From positions 1 to 64,000 of IMG/VR virus record IMGVR_UViG_3300024358_000009: a DNA stretch of 64,000 nucleotides; one strand, written 5' to 3'. Position numbers and translations under genes: made by a program. The notes beneath the pieces were generated by a model. The model was not told the origin of the DNA, searched no databases, and saw only the letters and a program-made list of their open reading frames with translations. Of this stretch, positions 4,200-28,339 are shown piece by piece. Position 1 is the first letter of the stretch. Every line of letters begins with the position of its first letter.

Positions 4200-4272
4200 G
4201 GGCTACTAGCTTAAATAGTAAAGCTCCGAACTCATAATTCGGTGAGTGAAAGTGCAAGTCTTTCGTAGCCCA
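4200..4272 (+). tRNA. tRNA with CAU anticodon (elongator Met or Ile2)
   Basis: Acceptor GGGCTAC/GTAGCCC, D stem GCTT/AAGC, anticodon stem CCGAA/TTCGG with loop CTCATAA, T stem GAAAG/CTTTC with loop TGCAAGT, discriminator A, no encoded CCA; G1:C72 pair argues against initiator. Confidence 0.88.
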
Positions 4273-4286
4273 CTAATTTAGAGGCA

Positions 4287-12460: not shown

Positions 12461-12752
12461 AAGGCTAGAATCTTTAAATGTCTCTAAAATATATATAACA
12501 TTCTTTTGCGAAAAAGATAAAATAGATATTATAAGCAATATAGTTATTATGACAGATGGAAGATATTCTGTTGATTGGAATGATGATATTTATAAAGACA
12601 AATCTTATATAACAGAACCAATTTTTCATTATGATAAAAAAGATTGGATTAATATAGATGGTCTATTAACTTGGGATGTTGTTAATAAAAAATTAATTAT
12701 TTCTGGCGAAAAAGAAAAATGTCTAAAAGAGAAGTTCTCCGAAGAAATATAA
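12438..12752 (+). CDS. hypothetical protein
   Basis: Packed ORF; GGAG upstream. Confidence 0.55.
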   Translation: MTKNEIFKRLESLNVSKIYITFFCEKDKIDIISNIVIMTDGRYSVDWNDDIYKDKSYITEPIFHYDKKDWINIDGLLTWDVVNKKLIISGEKEKCLKEKFSEEI

Positions 12753-12881
12753 TGGCGTATTTATATACGCTATGGAAATAAACATAATTGATAATGCTAG
12801 GCCGTATATTGAATTATTTTTTTGGTTTCTTATATATAATTTGATAATCTTTACTATGAAAGAAGTTTTGAAAGATTCTGA

Positions 12882-12910
12882 TTAATTTTTTGACGATTGT
12901 GACGAATAAG
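12882..12910 (+). promoter_or_regulatory. repeated promoter motif (TTAA-N16-ACGAATAAG)
   Basis: In 180-bp intergenic gap; followed by AAGGAGG. Confidence 0.7.
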
Positions 12911-12936
12911 ATGATATACAACTCAAGGAGGTAAGT

Positions 12937-13170
12937 ATGATTAGTTTTTTCAAAAAGTTTTTTGTTAAGTCTGAAGATCAATTGAAAGTTTTAGAACTTC
13001 AAAATGAAATAAGTTCATTAAAAAGAATAGTTCAAGATTTAGAAATTGAAAATTCTGATTTTGAAATAGCAAAATTTAATCTTATTGATGAAAATAAGGA
13101 ACTAGAAAGACAGATTAGAGAACTAAATAAAAAGATAGATTCTATAAAAATTATACTGGAATATAAATGA
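12937..13170 (+). CDS. coiled-coil hypothetical protein
   Basis: AAGGAGG RBS; heptad pattern. Confidence 0.65.
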   Translation: MISFFKKFFVKSEDQLKVLELQNEISSLKRIVQDLEIENSDFEIAKFNLIDENKELERQIRELNKKIDSIKIILEYK

Positions 13171-13175
13171 TAAAA

Positions 13176-13244
13176 GGGCGGTATTGCAATTTTCATAGTT
13201 CGGTGGGATGAAGTTGCATTTTTGGCTTGTTGTCAAAACCGCCC
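13176..13244 (+). other. predicted three-way-junction RNA structure upstream of csrA-like gene
   Basis: GGGCGGT/ACCGCCC closing stem; TGCAATTTTCAT/ATGAAGTTGCA and TTTGGC/GTCAAA inner stems. Confidence 0.5.
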
Positions 13245-13263
13245 CTCTTATTTTGGAGATGAA

Positions 13264-13464
13264 ATGGAAAACGGAAATTTAGTTTTTACTAGGAATTTTG
13301 GCGAATCTTTTACTGTTTATACGCCAAATGGAAATGTAGTAATAACACTATTATCAAATAAATTTAGTACTAATCAGGTTAAAGTATCTGTTAGTGCTCC
13401 TAAAAACTTTAAGATAATGAGAAATGAGATAATTAATACCACAAGAGACAAAAGCCATGAATAG
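13264..13464 (+). CDS. csrA: carbon storage regulator CsrA/RsmA family RNA-binding protein
   Basis: LVFTRNFGESFTV...QVKVSVSAPKNFKIMRNEI matches LVLTRK.GESI.I...QVRIGI.APK...I.R.E; GGAG RBS. Confidence 0.8.
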   Translation: MENGNLVFTRNFGESFTVYTPNGNVVITLLSNKFSTNQVKVSVSAPKNFKIMRNEIINTTRDKSHE

Positions 13465-14737
13465 AAGACATTTTTTACAGCATACTACTGAGTTTGCTTC
13501 TCTTGCACTATTATCAAATCTTCATGCTCAGCAAGAAACAATAAAGAAAAAGGGCAAAAGATTAATAGTTCTTTGGATGAGCGGTGGCCCAAGTCATATG
13601 GACTTGTGGGATCTAAAGCAGGGAGAATCTACTGGTGGAGATTTTAAGCCAATCAACACTTCGGCAAACGGAGTGCAGATTAGTGAAGTTCTTCCAACGA
13701 TTGCTTCACAATTCCACAACTTGGTGGCTATTCGATCTTTGGTTACTAATGAAGGTAGCCATGAGCGTGGCACATACTTAATGAATACGGCTAAACAGCC
13801 TAATCCAGTAGTACAGTATCCAGCTATGGGTGCTGTAGTTTCTTCTTTGATTGGTTCTAAAGAGTTAGCTTTACCAAACTTTATAGGGATTGGTGGTACT
13901 GCTCAAAGAGTTGGCCCAGGTTTTCTTGGAGCTATGTACACACCATTTGTTGTGCAGAATCCTGGTGTTCCACCAGAAAACATTAAAGCACCAGCATCGC
14001 TTGGAGATGACGATGAAAGACTACGCAGAAGACAAAGATTGTTCTATGGAATAGAAGATGAATTTGCCCAAAAAGTAATGCCTCATATTAAAAAGGCTAA
14101 AGATAGAGAAAATTTAGGCAATGTGGCTGAATCTCACTCGTCTATTTATGGTAAAGCCTTTGATCTTACCATATCGCCACTTAGGACAGTATTTGAGATT
14201 AAAAACGAAAACACCGCCACTATTGAAGCTTATGGCGGTAGAATGAACCAATTTGGCATGGGATGCCTTCTTGCTAGAAAACTTGTCGAGAAGGGAGTTA
14301 GTTGTGTTCAAGTCGATCTCGGCGGATGGGATAATCATAATAATATCTTTTCTACTATTAGGAATGGTAATGGCCCTCGGCTTGATAAAGGTTTTGGAAA
14401 CTTGGTAAAAGAACTTAATGATATTGGTTTATGGAAAGATACAGTAGTTCTTTGGATGGGCGAATTTGGTCGTACTCCTAAGATTAATCAAAATGGTGGG
14501 CGTGACCATTGGGCTAGATGTTGGTCTGTTGTCGTTGGCGGTGGTGCAATTAAGGGCGGTCAAGCGTATGGATCAACAAGTAAAGATGGGTTAGATATTA
14601 AAGATAAGCCATGTACCATTGGCGATATTTACGCAACTGTTTATAAAGCTTTAGACATGGATCTTTCTGCTCAAATTAGAGATAACATCGGAAGACCTAT
14701 GAATATTGCAGAAGGAAAACCTTTAGATATTTTTTAA
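13457..14737 (+). CDS. DUF1501 domain protein with Tat signal
   Basis: MNRRHFL; LWMSGGPSHMDLWDLK; GGWDNH; GEFGRTPKIN...GRDHW. Confidence 0.9.
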   Translation: MNRRHFLQHTTEFASLALLSNLHAQQETIKKKGKRLIVLWMSGGPSHMDLWDLKQGESTGGDFKPINTSANGVQISEVLPTIASQFHNLVAIRSLVTNEGSHERGTYLMNTAKQPNPVVQYPAMGAVVSSLIGSKELALPNFIGIGGTAQRVGPGFLGAMYTPFVVQNPGVPPENIKAPASLGDDDERLRRRQRLFYGIEDEFAQKVMPHIKKAKDRENLGNVAESHSSIYGKAFDLTISPLRTVFEIKNENTATIEAYGGRMNQFGMGCLLARKLVEKGVSCVQVDLGGWDNHNNIFSTIRNGNGPRLDKGFGNLVKELNDIGLWKDTVVLWMGEFGRTPKINQNGGRDHWARCWSVVVGGGAIKGGQAYGSTSKDGLDIKDKPCTIGDIYATVYKALDMDLSAQIRDNIGRPMNIAEGKPLDIF

Positions 14738-14748
14738 AAGGAGTTTTT

Positions 14749-14910
14749 GTGCTTAAAAAATACGCAGGAAAAGTAAAATGTTTGGGATGGTGCAATAAAG
14801 AATTTATATCTCCAAACAAAGTTTATGTTCGTTTGTGTCATGAGTGTAAAGAGAAAAGCAATAATCTCAGAGCAAGAAGAAATTCTAAATATCTAGAAGT
14901 TAAAGATTGA
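14749..14910 (+). CDS. small Zn-finger protein (53 aa)
   Basis: GTG start after AAGGAG; KCLGWCNKEFISP...LCHEC; paralog of 28157..28339. Confidence 0.65.
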   Translation: MLKKYAGKVKCLGWCNKEFISPNKVYVRLCHECKEKSNNLRARRNSKYLEVKD

Positions 14911-14969: not shown

Positions 14970-15000
14970 AAGTTGGTGTGTTGCCAACTTAGTTTTTGTT
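14970..15000 (+). promoter_or_regulatory. leader hairpin with T-tract (attenuator- or terminator-like)
   Basis: AAGTTGG/CCAACTT stem then AGTTTTTGTT, between promoter motif and RBS. Confidence 0.45.
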
Positions 15001-15267: not shown

Positions 15268-15302
15268 AAAGAAGGGGGGCTTTATGCTCCCCTTTTCTTT
15301 TT
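15268..15302 (+). terminator. intrinsic terminator
   Basis: AAGAAGGGGGGC / GCTCCCCTTTTCTT stem with T-run. Confidence 0.7.
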
Positions 15303-27693: not shown

Positions 27694-28200
27694 ATGAAAA
27701 ATAATGCAGAAACAAAAATTGCACTAAAACGCAATATAAAAGACTTAATAAGAATAGAAAGTGATTCAAATCTTATAGAAGATCCAGACTTTGGGGTTTT
27801 AAAAACAGATATTGGCTGGAAAGAAGAAGACTTTGTTGCATATGTAAGAAAAAAGAACACATCTATATACATATGTCAAATAAGTAATAGTATAATTGGA
27901 TATATAGCTTTCTCAAAAGAAAACGACATTTTAACAATAGATAAATTAGTTATTGATCCAGTTTTAAGAAAAAATGGATTTGGATCAACTTTATTGAACT
28001 TTGTTGAAAATTTAAACTTTTCAAAAATAATTGCTTATGTTAGAGAAAATGATGATGAAAGCATTTTGTTTTTTAAAAACAGAGGTTTTATTGCAAGACT
28101 ACAAAAAAATCATTATGGTTCTTCTATAGACGCTATAGTTTTTGAGAGAAATAAAAATGAAGAAAAAAAATATAAACCAACCAAAAGGAAAACTCGTTAA
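27694..28200 (+). CDS. GNAT acetyltransferase (RimI-like)
   Basis: IDKLVIDP.LRKNGFG..LL, VREND...LFFK.RGF, HY....DA. Confidence 0.8.
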   Translation: MKNNAETKIALKRNIKDLIRIESDSNLIEDPDFGVLKTDIGWKEEDFVAYVRKKNTSIYICQISNSIIGYIAFSKENDILTIDKLVIDPVLRKNGFGSTLLNFVENLNFSKIIAYVRENDDESILFFKNRGFIARLQKNHYGSSIDAIVFERNKNEEKKYKPTKRKTR

Positions 28201-28339
28201 TTGTCTTGGTTGGTGCAATAAAACATTTATTTCTCCAGACCCAACATCAATAAGGTTTTGTCCTAAGTGCAAAGACAAAAAAAGAGATATGTGTTTATCT
28301 AAATTTGAAACAAAAGAATTAAAAGTGAATTATGATTAG
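28157..28339 (+). CDS. small Zn-finger protein
   Basis: NCLGWCNKTFISP...FCPKC; paralog of 14749..14910. Confidence 0.65.
   Translation: MKKKNINQPKGKLVNCLGWCNKTFISPDPTSIRFCPKCKDKKRDMCLSKFETKELKVNYD

What the first reader, a model, noticed from the sequence alone, without database searches (positions are those of the whole stretch)
13176..13263. GC-rich tRNA-sized structured element directly upstream of csrA-DUF1501
Seen: a 69-nt fold with a 7-bp closing stem, a long hairpin and a 5-bp/7-nt arm stacked on the closing stem (T-arm-like geometry), but no anticodon arm. GGA motifs occur near the long hairpin loop and in the RBS. Established: CsrA binds GGA in mRNA leaders. Inference: a cis-regulatory RNA, possibly CsrA autoregulation, or an undescribed ncRNA.
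Basis: partly seen in the sequence, partly recalled or inferred. Interest (0 to 1): 0.6.

Follow-up and report, generated by a model that had tools for sequence, protein, structure and literature searches.

The report
Conserved folded RNA before phage csrA
A 69-base Y-shaped RNA fold just upstream of a phage-encoded CsrA regulator gene is real and kept by evolution in a clade of freshwater phages, matches no described RNA family, and probably tunes expression of the gene behind it, though how is not settled.

Summary
Window 13176-13244 (+) folds into a three-way junction: a 7-bp G+C-rich closing stem, a long hairpin with a G-run, and a short hairpin with a UUGUU loop stacked on the closing stem. 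It lies between a small coiled-coil ORF and csrA, which overlaps a DUF1501 gene.

The fold is conserved. In 17 distinct relatives 96% of pair cells are paired, 15 of 21 pairs show compensatory changes, and no shuffle of 500 reaches this. RNAalifold finds the same helices on a sequence-only alignment. G.U pairs point to the + strand.

The 206-kb phage has three copies: two before paralogous csrA-DUF1501 cassettes and one before a C5 DNA methyltransferase gene. Related phages have one, always before csrA.

It is not a tRNA, not an Rfam family and not an intrinsic terminator. Most relatives lack a U-tract, and RNA-library contigs run through it.

Function is open. My best guess, at about 0.3, is an operator for the phage CsrA-like protein that bridges the hairpin-1 G-run and the Shine-Dalgarno GGA, 44-53 nt apart. 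Against this, 6 of 17 variants lack GGA in that loop, one subclade has lost hairpin 1, and one lineage has no element.

Verdict: a real, undescribed phage RNA motif of moderate interest.

The parts
12937..13170 (+). Upstream cistron: a 77-aa coiled-coil ORF with stop TGA at 13168-13170, 5 nt before the element. It is conserved as the first gene of the cassette in all relatives.
   Evidence: ORF list. Only weak sub-threshold Pfam hits. Homologous ORFs lie upstream in copy 2 and in the second lineage.
13176..13182 (+). Closing stem, 5' strand (GGGCGGU).
   Evidence: Fold. Pairs covary: GGGUGGU/ACCACCC in L111 and GGUGUCU/AGACACC in the second lineage.
13185..13218 (+). Hairpin 1: a long arm with a 9-bp lower stem and a variable upper part.
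   Evidence: Fold. All 5 modelled pairs show compensatory changes and 100% of cells are paired. Hairpin 1 is missing in one subclade.
13202..13208 (+). Conserved G-run GGUGGGA in the apical region of hairpin 1, containing the GGA at 13206-13208.
   Evidence: GG[U/C]GGG is present in 16 of 17 aligned variants, and copy 3 has GGCAGGG. GGA follows in 11 of 17. The GGA is partly paired in predictions.
13221..13237 (+). Hairpin 2: 6 bp with pentaloop UUGUU (13227-13231), stacked directly on the closing stem.
   Evidence: Fold. Four of 5 modelled pairs covary. The loop 3' half GUU is kept in every variant, including those without hairpin 1.
13238..13244 (+). Closing stem, 3' strand (ACCGCCC).
13245..13263 (+). 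Unstructured linker and ribosome-binding site: 10 nt, then Shine-Dalgarno GGAG at 13255-13258, then 5 nt to the AUG.
   Evidence: Sequence. The element ends 17-27 nt before the AUG in all lineages. The ribosome-binding site is predicted largely unpaired.
13264..13464 (+). csrA-like gene (66 aa).
   Evidence: Pfam PF02599 at E 3.6e-9. A profile of the phage proteins matches solved CsrA/RsmE chains, with the beta-1 L..TR, APK and R44-equivalent positions aligned.
13457..14737 (+). DUF1501 gene (426 aa, with an N-terminal RR motif). Its start overlaps the csrA stop by 8 nt.
   Evidence: Pfam PF07394 at E 1.5e-92; ORF coordinates. The two genes overlap by 8, 4 and 4 nt in the loci checked (copy 1, copy 2, L012) and by 1-8 nt or are 11 nt apart in the gene tables of further loci.

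Best explanation
The element is a genuine, evolutionarily maintained three-way-junction RNA within a polycistronic phage mRNA. It lies between the stop codon of a small coiled-coil ORF and the ribosome-binding site of a phage csrA gene, whose translation is in turn coupled to a DUF1501 gene. It acts in cis, after transcription, on the cistron behind it. The mechanism I think most likely is a translational operator for the phage's own CsrA-like protein. One RNA-binding face of the dimer would dock on the G-run (GGUGGGA) displayed by hairpin 1. The other face would reach the GGA of the Shine-Dalgarno sequence 44-53 nt downstream and block 30S binding. That would set the level of CsrA and, through the overlapping start, of DUF1501. 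Shown here: the fold, its covariation, its strand, its position, its restriction to three sites in the genome, and that it is neither a terminator nor a known family. Inferred: that a protein binds it, that this protein is CsrA, and the direction of the effect.
For: The structure is real. In 17 distinct sequences 96.3% of cells are paired, 15 of 21 pairs changed on both sides, there are 52 compensatory cells, 0 of 500 shuffles reach this, and slid controls give 34-47% (12-sequence version). RNAalifold finds the same helices on the sequence-only alignment, and single-sequence folds of each lineage agree. The + strand is indicated by 15 G.U cells against 4 A.C cells, and all genes lie on +.

The element is gene-specific. 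The 206-kb genome has only 3 copies, two of them directly before csrA. Each of five related phage records has one copy, before csrA. DUF1501-only phage loci and bacterial csrA loci have none.

The layout fits a CsrA-type operator. The protein keeps the CsrA fold and the R44-equivalent arginine. GGA lies in the hairpin-1 apex in 11 of 17 variants and in every Shine-Dalgarno sequence, 44-53 nt apart. That is inside the 10-63 nt range that a CsrA dimer can bridge. The arrangement resembles glgC (hairpin site plus Shine-Dalgarno site), and E. coli CsrA represses its own translation (review PMC7652899).

The copy before the methyltransferase gene carries ACAAGGAU at its Shine-Dalgarno sequence, which matches the ACARGGAU core of the SELEX consensus, and CAGGGA in its hairpin-1 loop. 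The ribosome-binding site itself is left unpaired, so any repression would need a trans factor.
Against: GGA is absent from the hairpin-1 loop in 6 of 17 variants: GGGC in L024, L063 and L111, and GGGUGA in L116, L119 and L120. The conserved unit is therefore GG[U/C]GGG, not the CsrA core. The GGA is predicted to be paired in most variants, with P(unpaired) of 0.05-0.5. Known high-affinity CsrA sites are short hairpins with GGA in a hexaloop.

A subclade of five variants lost hairpin 1 altogether yet keeps csrA intact and keeps the closing stem and hairpin 2. One lineage has only a 33-nt spacer and no element. CsrA binding does not explain the conserved YGUU pentaloop of hairpin 2 or the near-invariant closing-stem sequence among the three paralogous copies. 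One copy precedes a gene other than csrA. No binding test of any kind was possible.
Confidence: 0.3

Rival explanations
1. It is an intercistronic processing or stability element. A host or phage endoribonuclease (RNase III on the stacked closing stem plus hairpin 2, RNase E nearby, or RNase P reading the 7-bp stem plus 5-6-bp arm as a tRNA-like minihelix) would cut at or beside the fold. That would uncouple the upstream ORF from csrA-DUF1501. It would leave a protective 3' hairpin on the upstream message, a protective 5' structure on the downstream one, or both.
For: The element lies between co-directional cistrons, 4-12 nt after a stop codon and a fixed short distance before the next ribosome-binding site. 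The closing stem is G+C-rich in a 30% G+C genome. After loss of hairpin 1 the remainder is still kept as a long imperfect hairpin of about 17-20 bp with further compensatory changes, which is about the size of phage T7 RNase III sites (from memory). The closing stem and hairpin 2 stack without a linker (7+6 bp), and copies 2 and 3 carry ACCA directly after the 7-bp stem.
Against: The element is used at only 3 of several hundred gene junctions in the genome, and almost only before csrA; a general processing signal should be more widespread. The ACCA tail is absent in copy 1 and in the whole second lineage. The stack is 16-17 bp there, not the 12 bp of a tRNA minihelix. The conserved loop sequences are not explained. 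RNA-library contigs show no break at the element, but contigs cannot show RNA ends.
Confidence: 0.2
2. It is a factor-independent translation module. The self-contained fold would insulate the csrA ribosome-binding site from pairing with upstream coding sequence. It might also offer a standby or enhancer site, because the hairpin-1 G-run contains an SD-like GGUG. It might bring the upstream stop codon within about 15 nt of the Shine-Dalgarno sequence so that terminating ribosomes re-initiate.
For: The native element leaves the ribosome-binding site more open than shuffled versions in 5 of 6 variants tested, for example 0.68 against 0.51 +/- 0.09. The element ends 17-27 nt before the AUG, just outside a 30S footprint. 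Stop-to-stem plus stem-to-SD distances sum to about 13-18 nt in copies 1-3 and, counting the A-U-extended stem, in the second lineage. GGUG occurs in the hairpin-1 loop in 16 of 17 variants.
Against: The accessibility effect is small and is expected of any compact fold. It does not explain the conserved hairpin-2 loop or the gene specificity. With the 5' strand blocked, as by a terminating ribosome, predicted refolding differs from variant to variant.
Confidence: 0.15
3. It is a transcription-level signal: an intrinsic terminator or attenuator, or a processive antitermination RNA acting on RNA polymerase, as HK022 put or Bacillus EAR do.
For: Copy 1 is followed by CUCUUAUUUU. Structured antitermination RNAs are known inside operons and in phages (from memory).
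Against: There is no U-tract after the stem in copies 2 and 3 or in the second lineage. The terminator scan reports nothing at the element. Contigs from four RNA libraries cross it at uniform depth. No Rfam antitermination family matches.
Confidence: 0.07
4. It is a riboswitch, a thermosensor, or a separately acting small RNA.
For: Its size and three-way-junction architecture resemble small riboswitch aptamers. It has conserved loop nucleotides.
Against: The junction strands are 0-3 nt long and not conserved, so there is no evident ligand pocket. The ribosome-binding site is not sequestered in any predicted state shared by the variants. No promoter or terminator of its own is evident, and no partner complementary to the G-run (CC[C/U]RCC or CCCRC[C/U]) is conserved in cis.
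Confidence: 0.07

Closest known systems
CsrA-bound mRNA leaders (E. coli glgC and csrA; B. subtilis hag)
   Same: The gene downstream encodes a CsrA-family protein. There is a GGA-containing site in an upstream hairpin and a second GGA in the Shine-Dalgarno sequence, spaced 44-53 nt apart, within the 10-63 nt range a dimer can bridge. Autoregulation of csrA translation is established in E. coli.
   Different: Known sites are short hairpins of 4 bp or fewer with GGA in a hexaloop, not a 60-70-nt three-way junction. Here the conserved loop motif is GG[U/C]GGG, and GGA is missing in 6 of 17 variants. Hairpin 1 is dispensable in some lineages. There is no sequence or Rfam relationship.
Phage T7 intercistronic RNase III processing hairpins (from memory)
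   Same: Both are structured elements between co-directional phage cistrons inside polycistronic mRNA, close to the next ribosome-binding site. The variants without hairpin 1 are imperfect hairpins of similar length.
   Different: T7 sites recur at many junctions and have no conserved apical loop. This element is nearly specific to csrA, is branched, and has conserved loops. Cleavage was not tested.
tRNA-like structures and minihelix substrates of RNase P in mRNAs (from memory)
   Same: Both have a 7-bp G+C-rich stem stacked directly on a 5-6-bp arm. An ACCA tail follows in copies 2 and 3.
   Different: There is no T-loop sequence and no D or anticodon arms. Neither ARAGORN nor the Rfam tRNA model reports it. 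The tail is absent in copy 1 and in the second lineage, and the stack is longer there.
Translational operators of phage RNA- or ssDNA-binding proteins (T4 gene 32 pseudoknot, regA) (from memory)
   Same: Both are folded nucleation elements upstream of an A/U-rich linker and the ribosome-binding site of the gene for the binding protein itself.
   Different: The fold and the protein family differ, and no evidence of binding exists here.

Membership tests
tRNA / tRNA-like (Rfam RF00005, ARAGORN) | Cloverleaf with D, anticodon and T arms, detectable by tRNA models | tested here: not met
   ARAGORN finds only tRNA-Met at 4200-4273 in the window and two tRNA-Leu elsewhere in the genome. No RF00005 match at the element even at E up to 10.
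tRNA / tRNA-like (Rfam RF00005, ARAGORN) | 7-bp acceptor stem stacked on a 5-bp arm with a T-loop, and a 3' NCCA | tested here: inconclusive
   The 7-bp stem stacked on a 5-6-bp arm is present. ACCA follows only in copies 2 and 3. The loop is UUGUU or GUGUU, not the T-loop consensus.
Intrinsic (Rho-independent) terminator | G+C-rich hairpin immediately followed by a U-tract, with transcripts ending there | tested here: not met
   The scan gives no terminator-like site at the element. A U-rich tail occurs only in the copy-1 type (copy 1, L113, L111), not in copies 2 and 3 or the second lineage. RNA-library contigs cross it in 4 of 4 runs (contigs only, so the evidence is weak).
CsrA-regulated leader | [quoted passage not shown] | tested here: inconclusive
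   GGA is present in 11 of 17 variants and absent in 6. It is predicted to be partly or mostly paired.
CsrA-regulated leader | Second GGA overlapping the Shine-Dalgarno sequence, 10-63 nt from the first | tested here: met
   An SD GGA is present in all variants. Spacing is 44-53 nt where the loop GGA exists. The range is taken from PMC7652899. Note that a GGA in an SD sequence is nearly unavoidable.
CsrA-regulated leader | Specific binding by a CsrA protein and CsrA-dependent repression | not testable with these tools
   This needs gel shift, footprint and reporter assays.
Any Rfam 15 family | Covariance-model score at or above gathering, or a consistent sub-threshold match across copies | tested here: not met
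   The only gathering-level hit in the window is the tRNA. The E-value searches around copy 1, copy 2, copy 3 and a second-lineage locus give only unrelated chance hits.
Riboswitch aptamer | Conserved unpaired junction or pocket nucleotides, plus an expression platform that alternates with the aptamer | tested here: not met
   Junction strands are 0-3 nt long and variable. No shared alternative fold sequesters the ribosome-binding site.
RNase III / RNase P processing site | Cleavage at defined positions in or next to the fold | not testable with these tools
   Only assembled contigs of the RNA runs were on hand. They cannot show RNA ends.

The most novel reading that the evidence does not exclude
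A new class of phage cis-regulatory RNA: a three-way-junction operator read by a phage-specific branch of the CsrA family whose preferred motif has shifted from GGA to GG[U/C]GGG. The second conserved loop (YGUU) and the closing stem would give extra specificity. The operator would control a translationally coupled csrA-DUF1501 auxiliary cassette and, in the jumbo phage, also a DNA methyltransferase operon. That would amount to a small phage-encoded Csr regulon with its own RNA code.
Probability: 0.12. Interest if true: 0.7.

Novelty: new variant of a known kind. Interest (0 to 1): 0.5.

Why it matters
csrA genes occur in about 1% of sequenced phages, and their role is almost untested: there is one census (PMC7366521) and one knock-down phenotype (PMC11879866). 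No RNA element has been linked to them. This motif gives a concrete, covariation-backed RNA partner or control point for a phage CsrA. It comes with natural deletion variants (no hairpin 1, no element) that act as ready-made controls, and with three paralogous copies in one genome. If the protein binds it, the pair would be a compact model for how phages tune or rewire Csr-type post-transcriptional control. If not, it is still a new structured RNA from uncultured freshwater phages. Its reach is narrow, being one phage clade, so the interest is moderate.

Tried and rejected
1. Rfam at gathering and at E-value thresholds on all copies gave nothing.
2. tRNA or tmRNA: no call. The phage's own tRNA acceptor stems are unrelated.
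3. Repeated or mobile element: repeat finding in the window shows no family that includes it. A covariance-model and descriptor scan of the whole 206-kb genome finds only 3 copies; the other weak hits match only Shine-Dalgarno-like sequence.
4. A pattern scan of IMG/VR for the closing stem plus hairpin-2 loop found only the same phage population plus three hits in higher-G+C contigs that do not fold alike.
5. INPHARED phage genomes: no DNA match to the cassette.
6. A species-genome scan with the CsrA profile found only distant ordinary bacterial CsrA, with no element.
7. Long-range pairing of the G-run: no CC[C/U]RCC or CCCRC[C/U] partner is conserved within -400 to +1600 nt. Only copies 2 and 3 have CCCACC, next to the stem.
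8. A two-state switch in which the hairpin-1 G-run replaces the similar 5' strand of the closing stem: constrained folds give that alternative in some variants (copy 2, L111, L014, L021) but not in others. This remains an idea, not a finding.
9. Anti-SD pairing by the 3' strand is seen in some second-lineage variants only.
10. Independent losses of hairpin 1: the tree needs 2 changes, but the well-supported branches allow 1, so this is unresolved.
11. RNA ends could not be read. All RNA runs are held as contigs, and the single read-laying run (3,801 bases, within the operators' limit) was used.
12. The large profile search, structure prediction and complex prediction were not used, because they do not bear on the RNA.

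Full report
**What is there**

The window is the first 64 kb of a 206,326-bp virus record of about 30% G+C, a jumbo phage from river metagenomes. At 13176-13244 on the + strand the sequence GGGCGGU ... ACCGCCC encloses 55 nt. This pattern occurs once in the window, against none in 100 shuffles.

ViennaRNA folds 13170-13270 into a three-way junction at -30.6 kcal/mol, z = -2.86 (-3.30 for 13172-13266). Its parts are:
- a 7-bp closing stem;
- hairpin 1 at 13185-13218;
- hairpin 2 at 13221-13237, with loop UUGUU, abutting the closing stem.

The element begins 5 nt after the stop codon of a 77-aa coiled-coil ORF (12937-13170). It ends 10 nt before the Shine-Dalgarno GGAG (13255-13258) of a 66-aa CsrA-family gene (13264-13464; Pfam E 3.6e-9). 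The end of that gene overlaps the start of a DUF1501 gene (13457-14737; E 1.5e-92).

**Is it conserved?**

- **Second copy in the same genome.** A paralogous cassette (coiled-coil ORF, element, csrA, DUF1501) lies near 163 kb.
- **Relatives.** Protein-guided searches of IMG/VR, JGI metagenomes and the large protein collection recovered the cassette on many freshwater phage contigs. These give 17 distinct full-length versions of the element in two deep lineages.
  - The window's type has closing stem GGGCGGU/ACCGCCC, or GGGUGGU/ACCACCC in L111.
  - The second lineage, from phages of about 140 kb, has core GGUGUCU/AGACACC extended by A-U pairs.
- **Same architecture everywhere.** Each lineage folds on its own into the same three-helix shape. 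RNAalifold predicts those three helices on a sequence-only MAFFT alignment.
- **Covariation.** On a model-fitted alignment of the 17 sequences, 96.3% of pair cells are standard pairs, 15 of 21 pairs carry changes on both sides, and there are 52 compensatory cells. None of 500 column shuffles reaches any of the five measures, and sliding the partners by 1-3 columns drops pairing to 34-47% (12-sequence version). The fitted alignment leans towards the model. The MAFFT/RNAalifold result and the single-sequence folds are independent of it.
- **Strand.** Fifteen G.U cells against four A.C cells, together with the gene orientation, assign the RNA to the + strand.

**What is conserved besides the helices**

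Two loop motifs are conserved:
- a G-run GG[U/C]GGG in the apical part of hairpin 1 (GGCAGGG in one copy);
- the 3' half GUU of the hairpin-2 pentaloop (UUGUU, GUGUU, GCGUU, AUGUU).

The junction strands are 0-3 nt long and not conserved.

**Distribution**

- A covariance model built here and a hand-written descriptor both find just three copies in the 206-kb genome.
- The third copy, at 161030-161098, has the same closing stem and the same short flanks as copy 2. Its two hairpins are largely rewritten yet still pair. It sits between an ORF and a C5 DNA methyltransferase gene, which heads the block that ends in the second csrA-DUF1501 cassette.
- Five second-lineage phage records, one of them complete at 142 kb, each have a single copy, before csrA.
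- Phage loci with a distant DUF1501 but no csrA lack the element, and so do bacterial csrA loci.
- An exact-pattern scan of IMG/VR adds nothing beyond the same phage population.
- Natural reductions exist. Five variants, at least four of them forming one supported clade, have lost hairpin 1 but keep, with further compensatory changes, the closing stem and hairpin 2. One more hairpin-1-less version is L121. One lineage (L122/L123) has only a 33-nt spacer. csrA is intact in every hairpin-1-less variant whose gene was translated here and is called at full length in L121 and L122/L123.

**What it is not**

- No Rfam 15 family matches any copy, even at permissive E-values.
- ARAGORN and the tRNA model do not see it.
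- It is not a canonical intrinsic terminator. Only the copy-1 type (copy 1 and its close relatives L113 and L111) has a U-rich tail, and the scan reports nothing at the element.
- Contigs from four metatranscriptomic libraries cross it without a break. In two runs the contigs start at 12714 or 12815 with a 5-fold rise in depth, which suggests a transcription unit starting in the 12753-12936 gap. That unit would include the coiled-coil ORF, the element, csrA and DUF1501. Contigs cannot prove a single transcript or show ends.
- The fold does not sequester the ribosome-binding site, which stays more open than with shuffled elements in 5 of 6 variants.

**How it most likely works**

Near-exclusive association with csrA, at 3 of several hundred junctions in this genome, argues for gene-specific control rather than a general punctuation signal. 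RNA-binding proteins commonly repress their own mRNAs. E. coli CsrA does so, and a CsrA dimer can bridge a hairpin site and a Shine-Dalgarno site 10-63 nt apart (PMC7652899).

In favour of a CsrA operator:
- The phage protein keeps the CsrA fold and key positions.
- A GGA lies in the hairpin-1 apex in 11 of 17 variants, 44-53 nt from the SD GGA.
- The methyltransferase copy has ACAAGGAU at its Shine-Dalgarno sequence.

I therefore rank a CsrA-type operator first, but only at about 0.3.

Against it:
- Six of 17 variants have no GGA in that loop.
- The GGA is often predicted to be paired.
- Hairpin 1 and even the whole element are dispensable in some lineages.
- CsrA binding does not account for the conserved hairpin-2 loop or the closing-stem sequence.

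Rivals:
- intercistronic processing or stability (about 0.2), including an RNase P-like reading of the 7+6-bp stack with its ACCA tail in two copies;
- a factor-independent translation insulator, standby site or re-initiation module (about 0.15);
- transcription-level signals (about 0.07);
- a riboswitch or small RNA (about 0.07).

That the element is a real, selected, cis-located RNA structure I hold at about 0.9.

**Comparison with what is known, and novelty**

Phage csrA genes have been counted (30 of 2,517 phage genomes; PMC7366521). One has a knock-down phenotype (PMC11879866). I found no described RNA element tied to them. The motif works most like a leader operator of an RNA-binding-protein gene, but it is not a member of any known family. 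I rate it a new variant of a known kind. Interest is moderate: the structural evidence is solid, the phylogenetic reach is narrow, and the mechanism is open.

Noticed in passing
window 12937-14737 and G000:C1 about 162822-164593 (L002 1278-3049): The jumbo phage carries two paralogous cassettes of coiled-coil ORF, element, csrA and DUF1501. The DUF1501 proteins are 91% identical and the CsrA proteins about 75%.
   Followed up: partly
window 13457-14737: The phage DUF1501 protein starts MNRRHF..., a twin-arginine-like signal, so it is probably exported. Its start overlaps the csrA stop by 8 nt here and by 4 nt in copy 2 and L012 (1-8 nt, or 11 nt apart, in further gene tables), which implies translational coupling. 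The gene's role in a phage is unknown.
   Followed up: no
G000:C1:161027-161117 (L081 1501-1591) and L081 1589-3090: A third copy of the element precedes a C5 DNA methyltransferase gene, which is followed by a second SAM-methyltransferase-like ORF. Its flanks and closing stem are identical to copy 2 over 11 and 14 nt, while both hairpins are rewritten.
   Followed up: partly
window 12714-12936: RNA-library contigs begin at 12714 (run X18) and 12815 (run X20) with about 5-fold higher depth than the contigs upstream. This suggests a promoter in the 185-nt gap before the coiled-coil ORF. The sequence ACUCAAGGAGG before that ORF is shared by both cassettes.
   Followed up: no
window 15270-15296 and 14970-14990: Two terminator-like hairpins with U-tracts lie downstream of DUF1501 and of the next small ORF. 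The one at 15270 has 11 pairs, 6 of them G-C. They may end the transcription unit.
   Followed up: no
L016, L025, L066, L068, L075, L121; L122/L123: Natural variants lack hairpin 1. The deletion end points coincide with a near-direct repeat, AAGGUGUCU and AAGGUCU. One lineage has no element at all and only a 33-nt spacer.
   Followed up: partly
window 13176-13182 versus 13202-13207, and the same positions in relatives: The hairpin-1 G-run resembles the 5' strand of the closing stem and could pair with its 3' strand: GGUGG with CCGCC or CCACC, and GGUG with CACC in the second lineage. Constrained folds give this alternative in only some variants.
   Followed up: partly
window 14773-14817 and 28196-28240: A 45-nt direct repeat at 80% identity (family D4), probably from paralogous small ORFs.
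   Followed up: no
window 4200-4273; G000:C1 145869-145942 and 152052-152124: The phage encodes tRNA-Met(CAU) and two tRNA-Leu(UAA) genes.
   Followed up: no
L115 1376-1436: One metagenome locus shows a run of N over the 5' part of the element (masked or withheld), so it was left out of the alignments.
   Followed up: no
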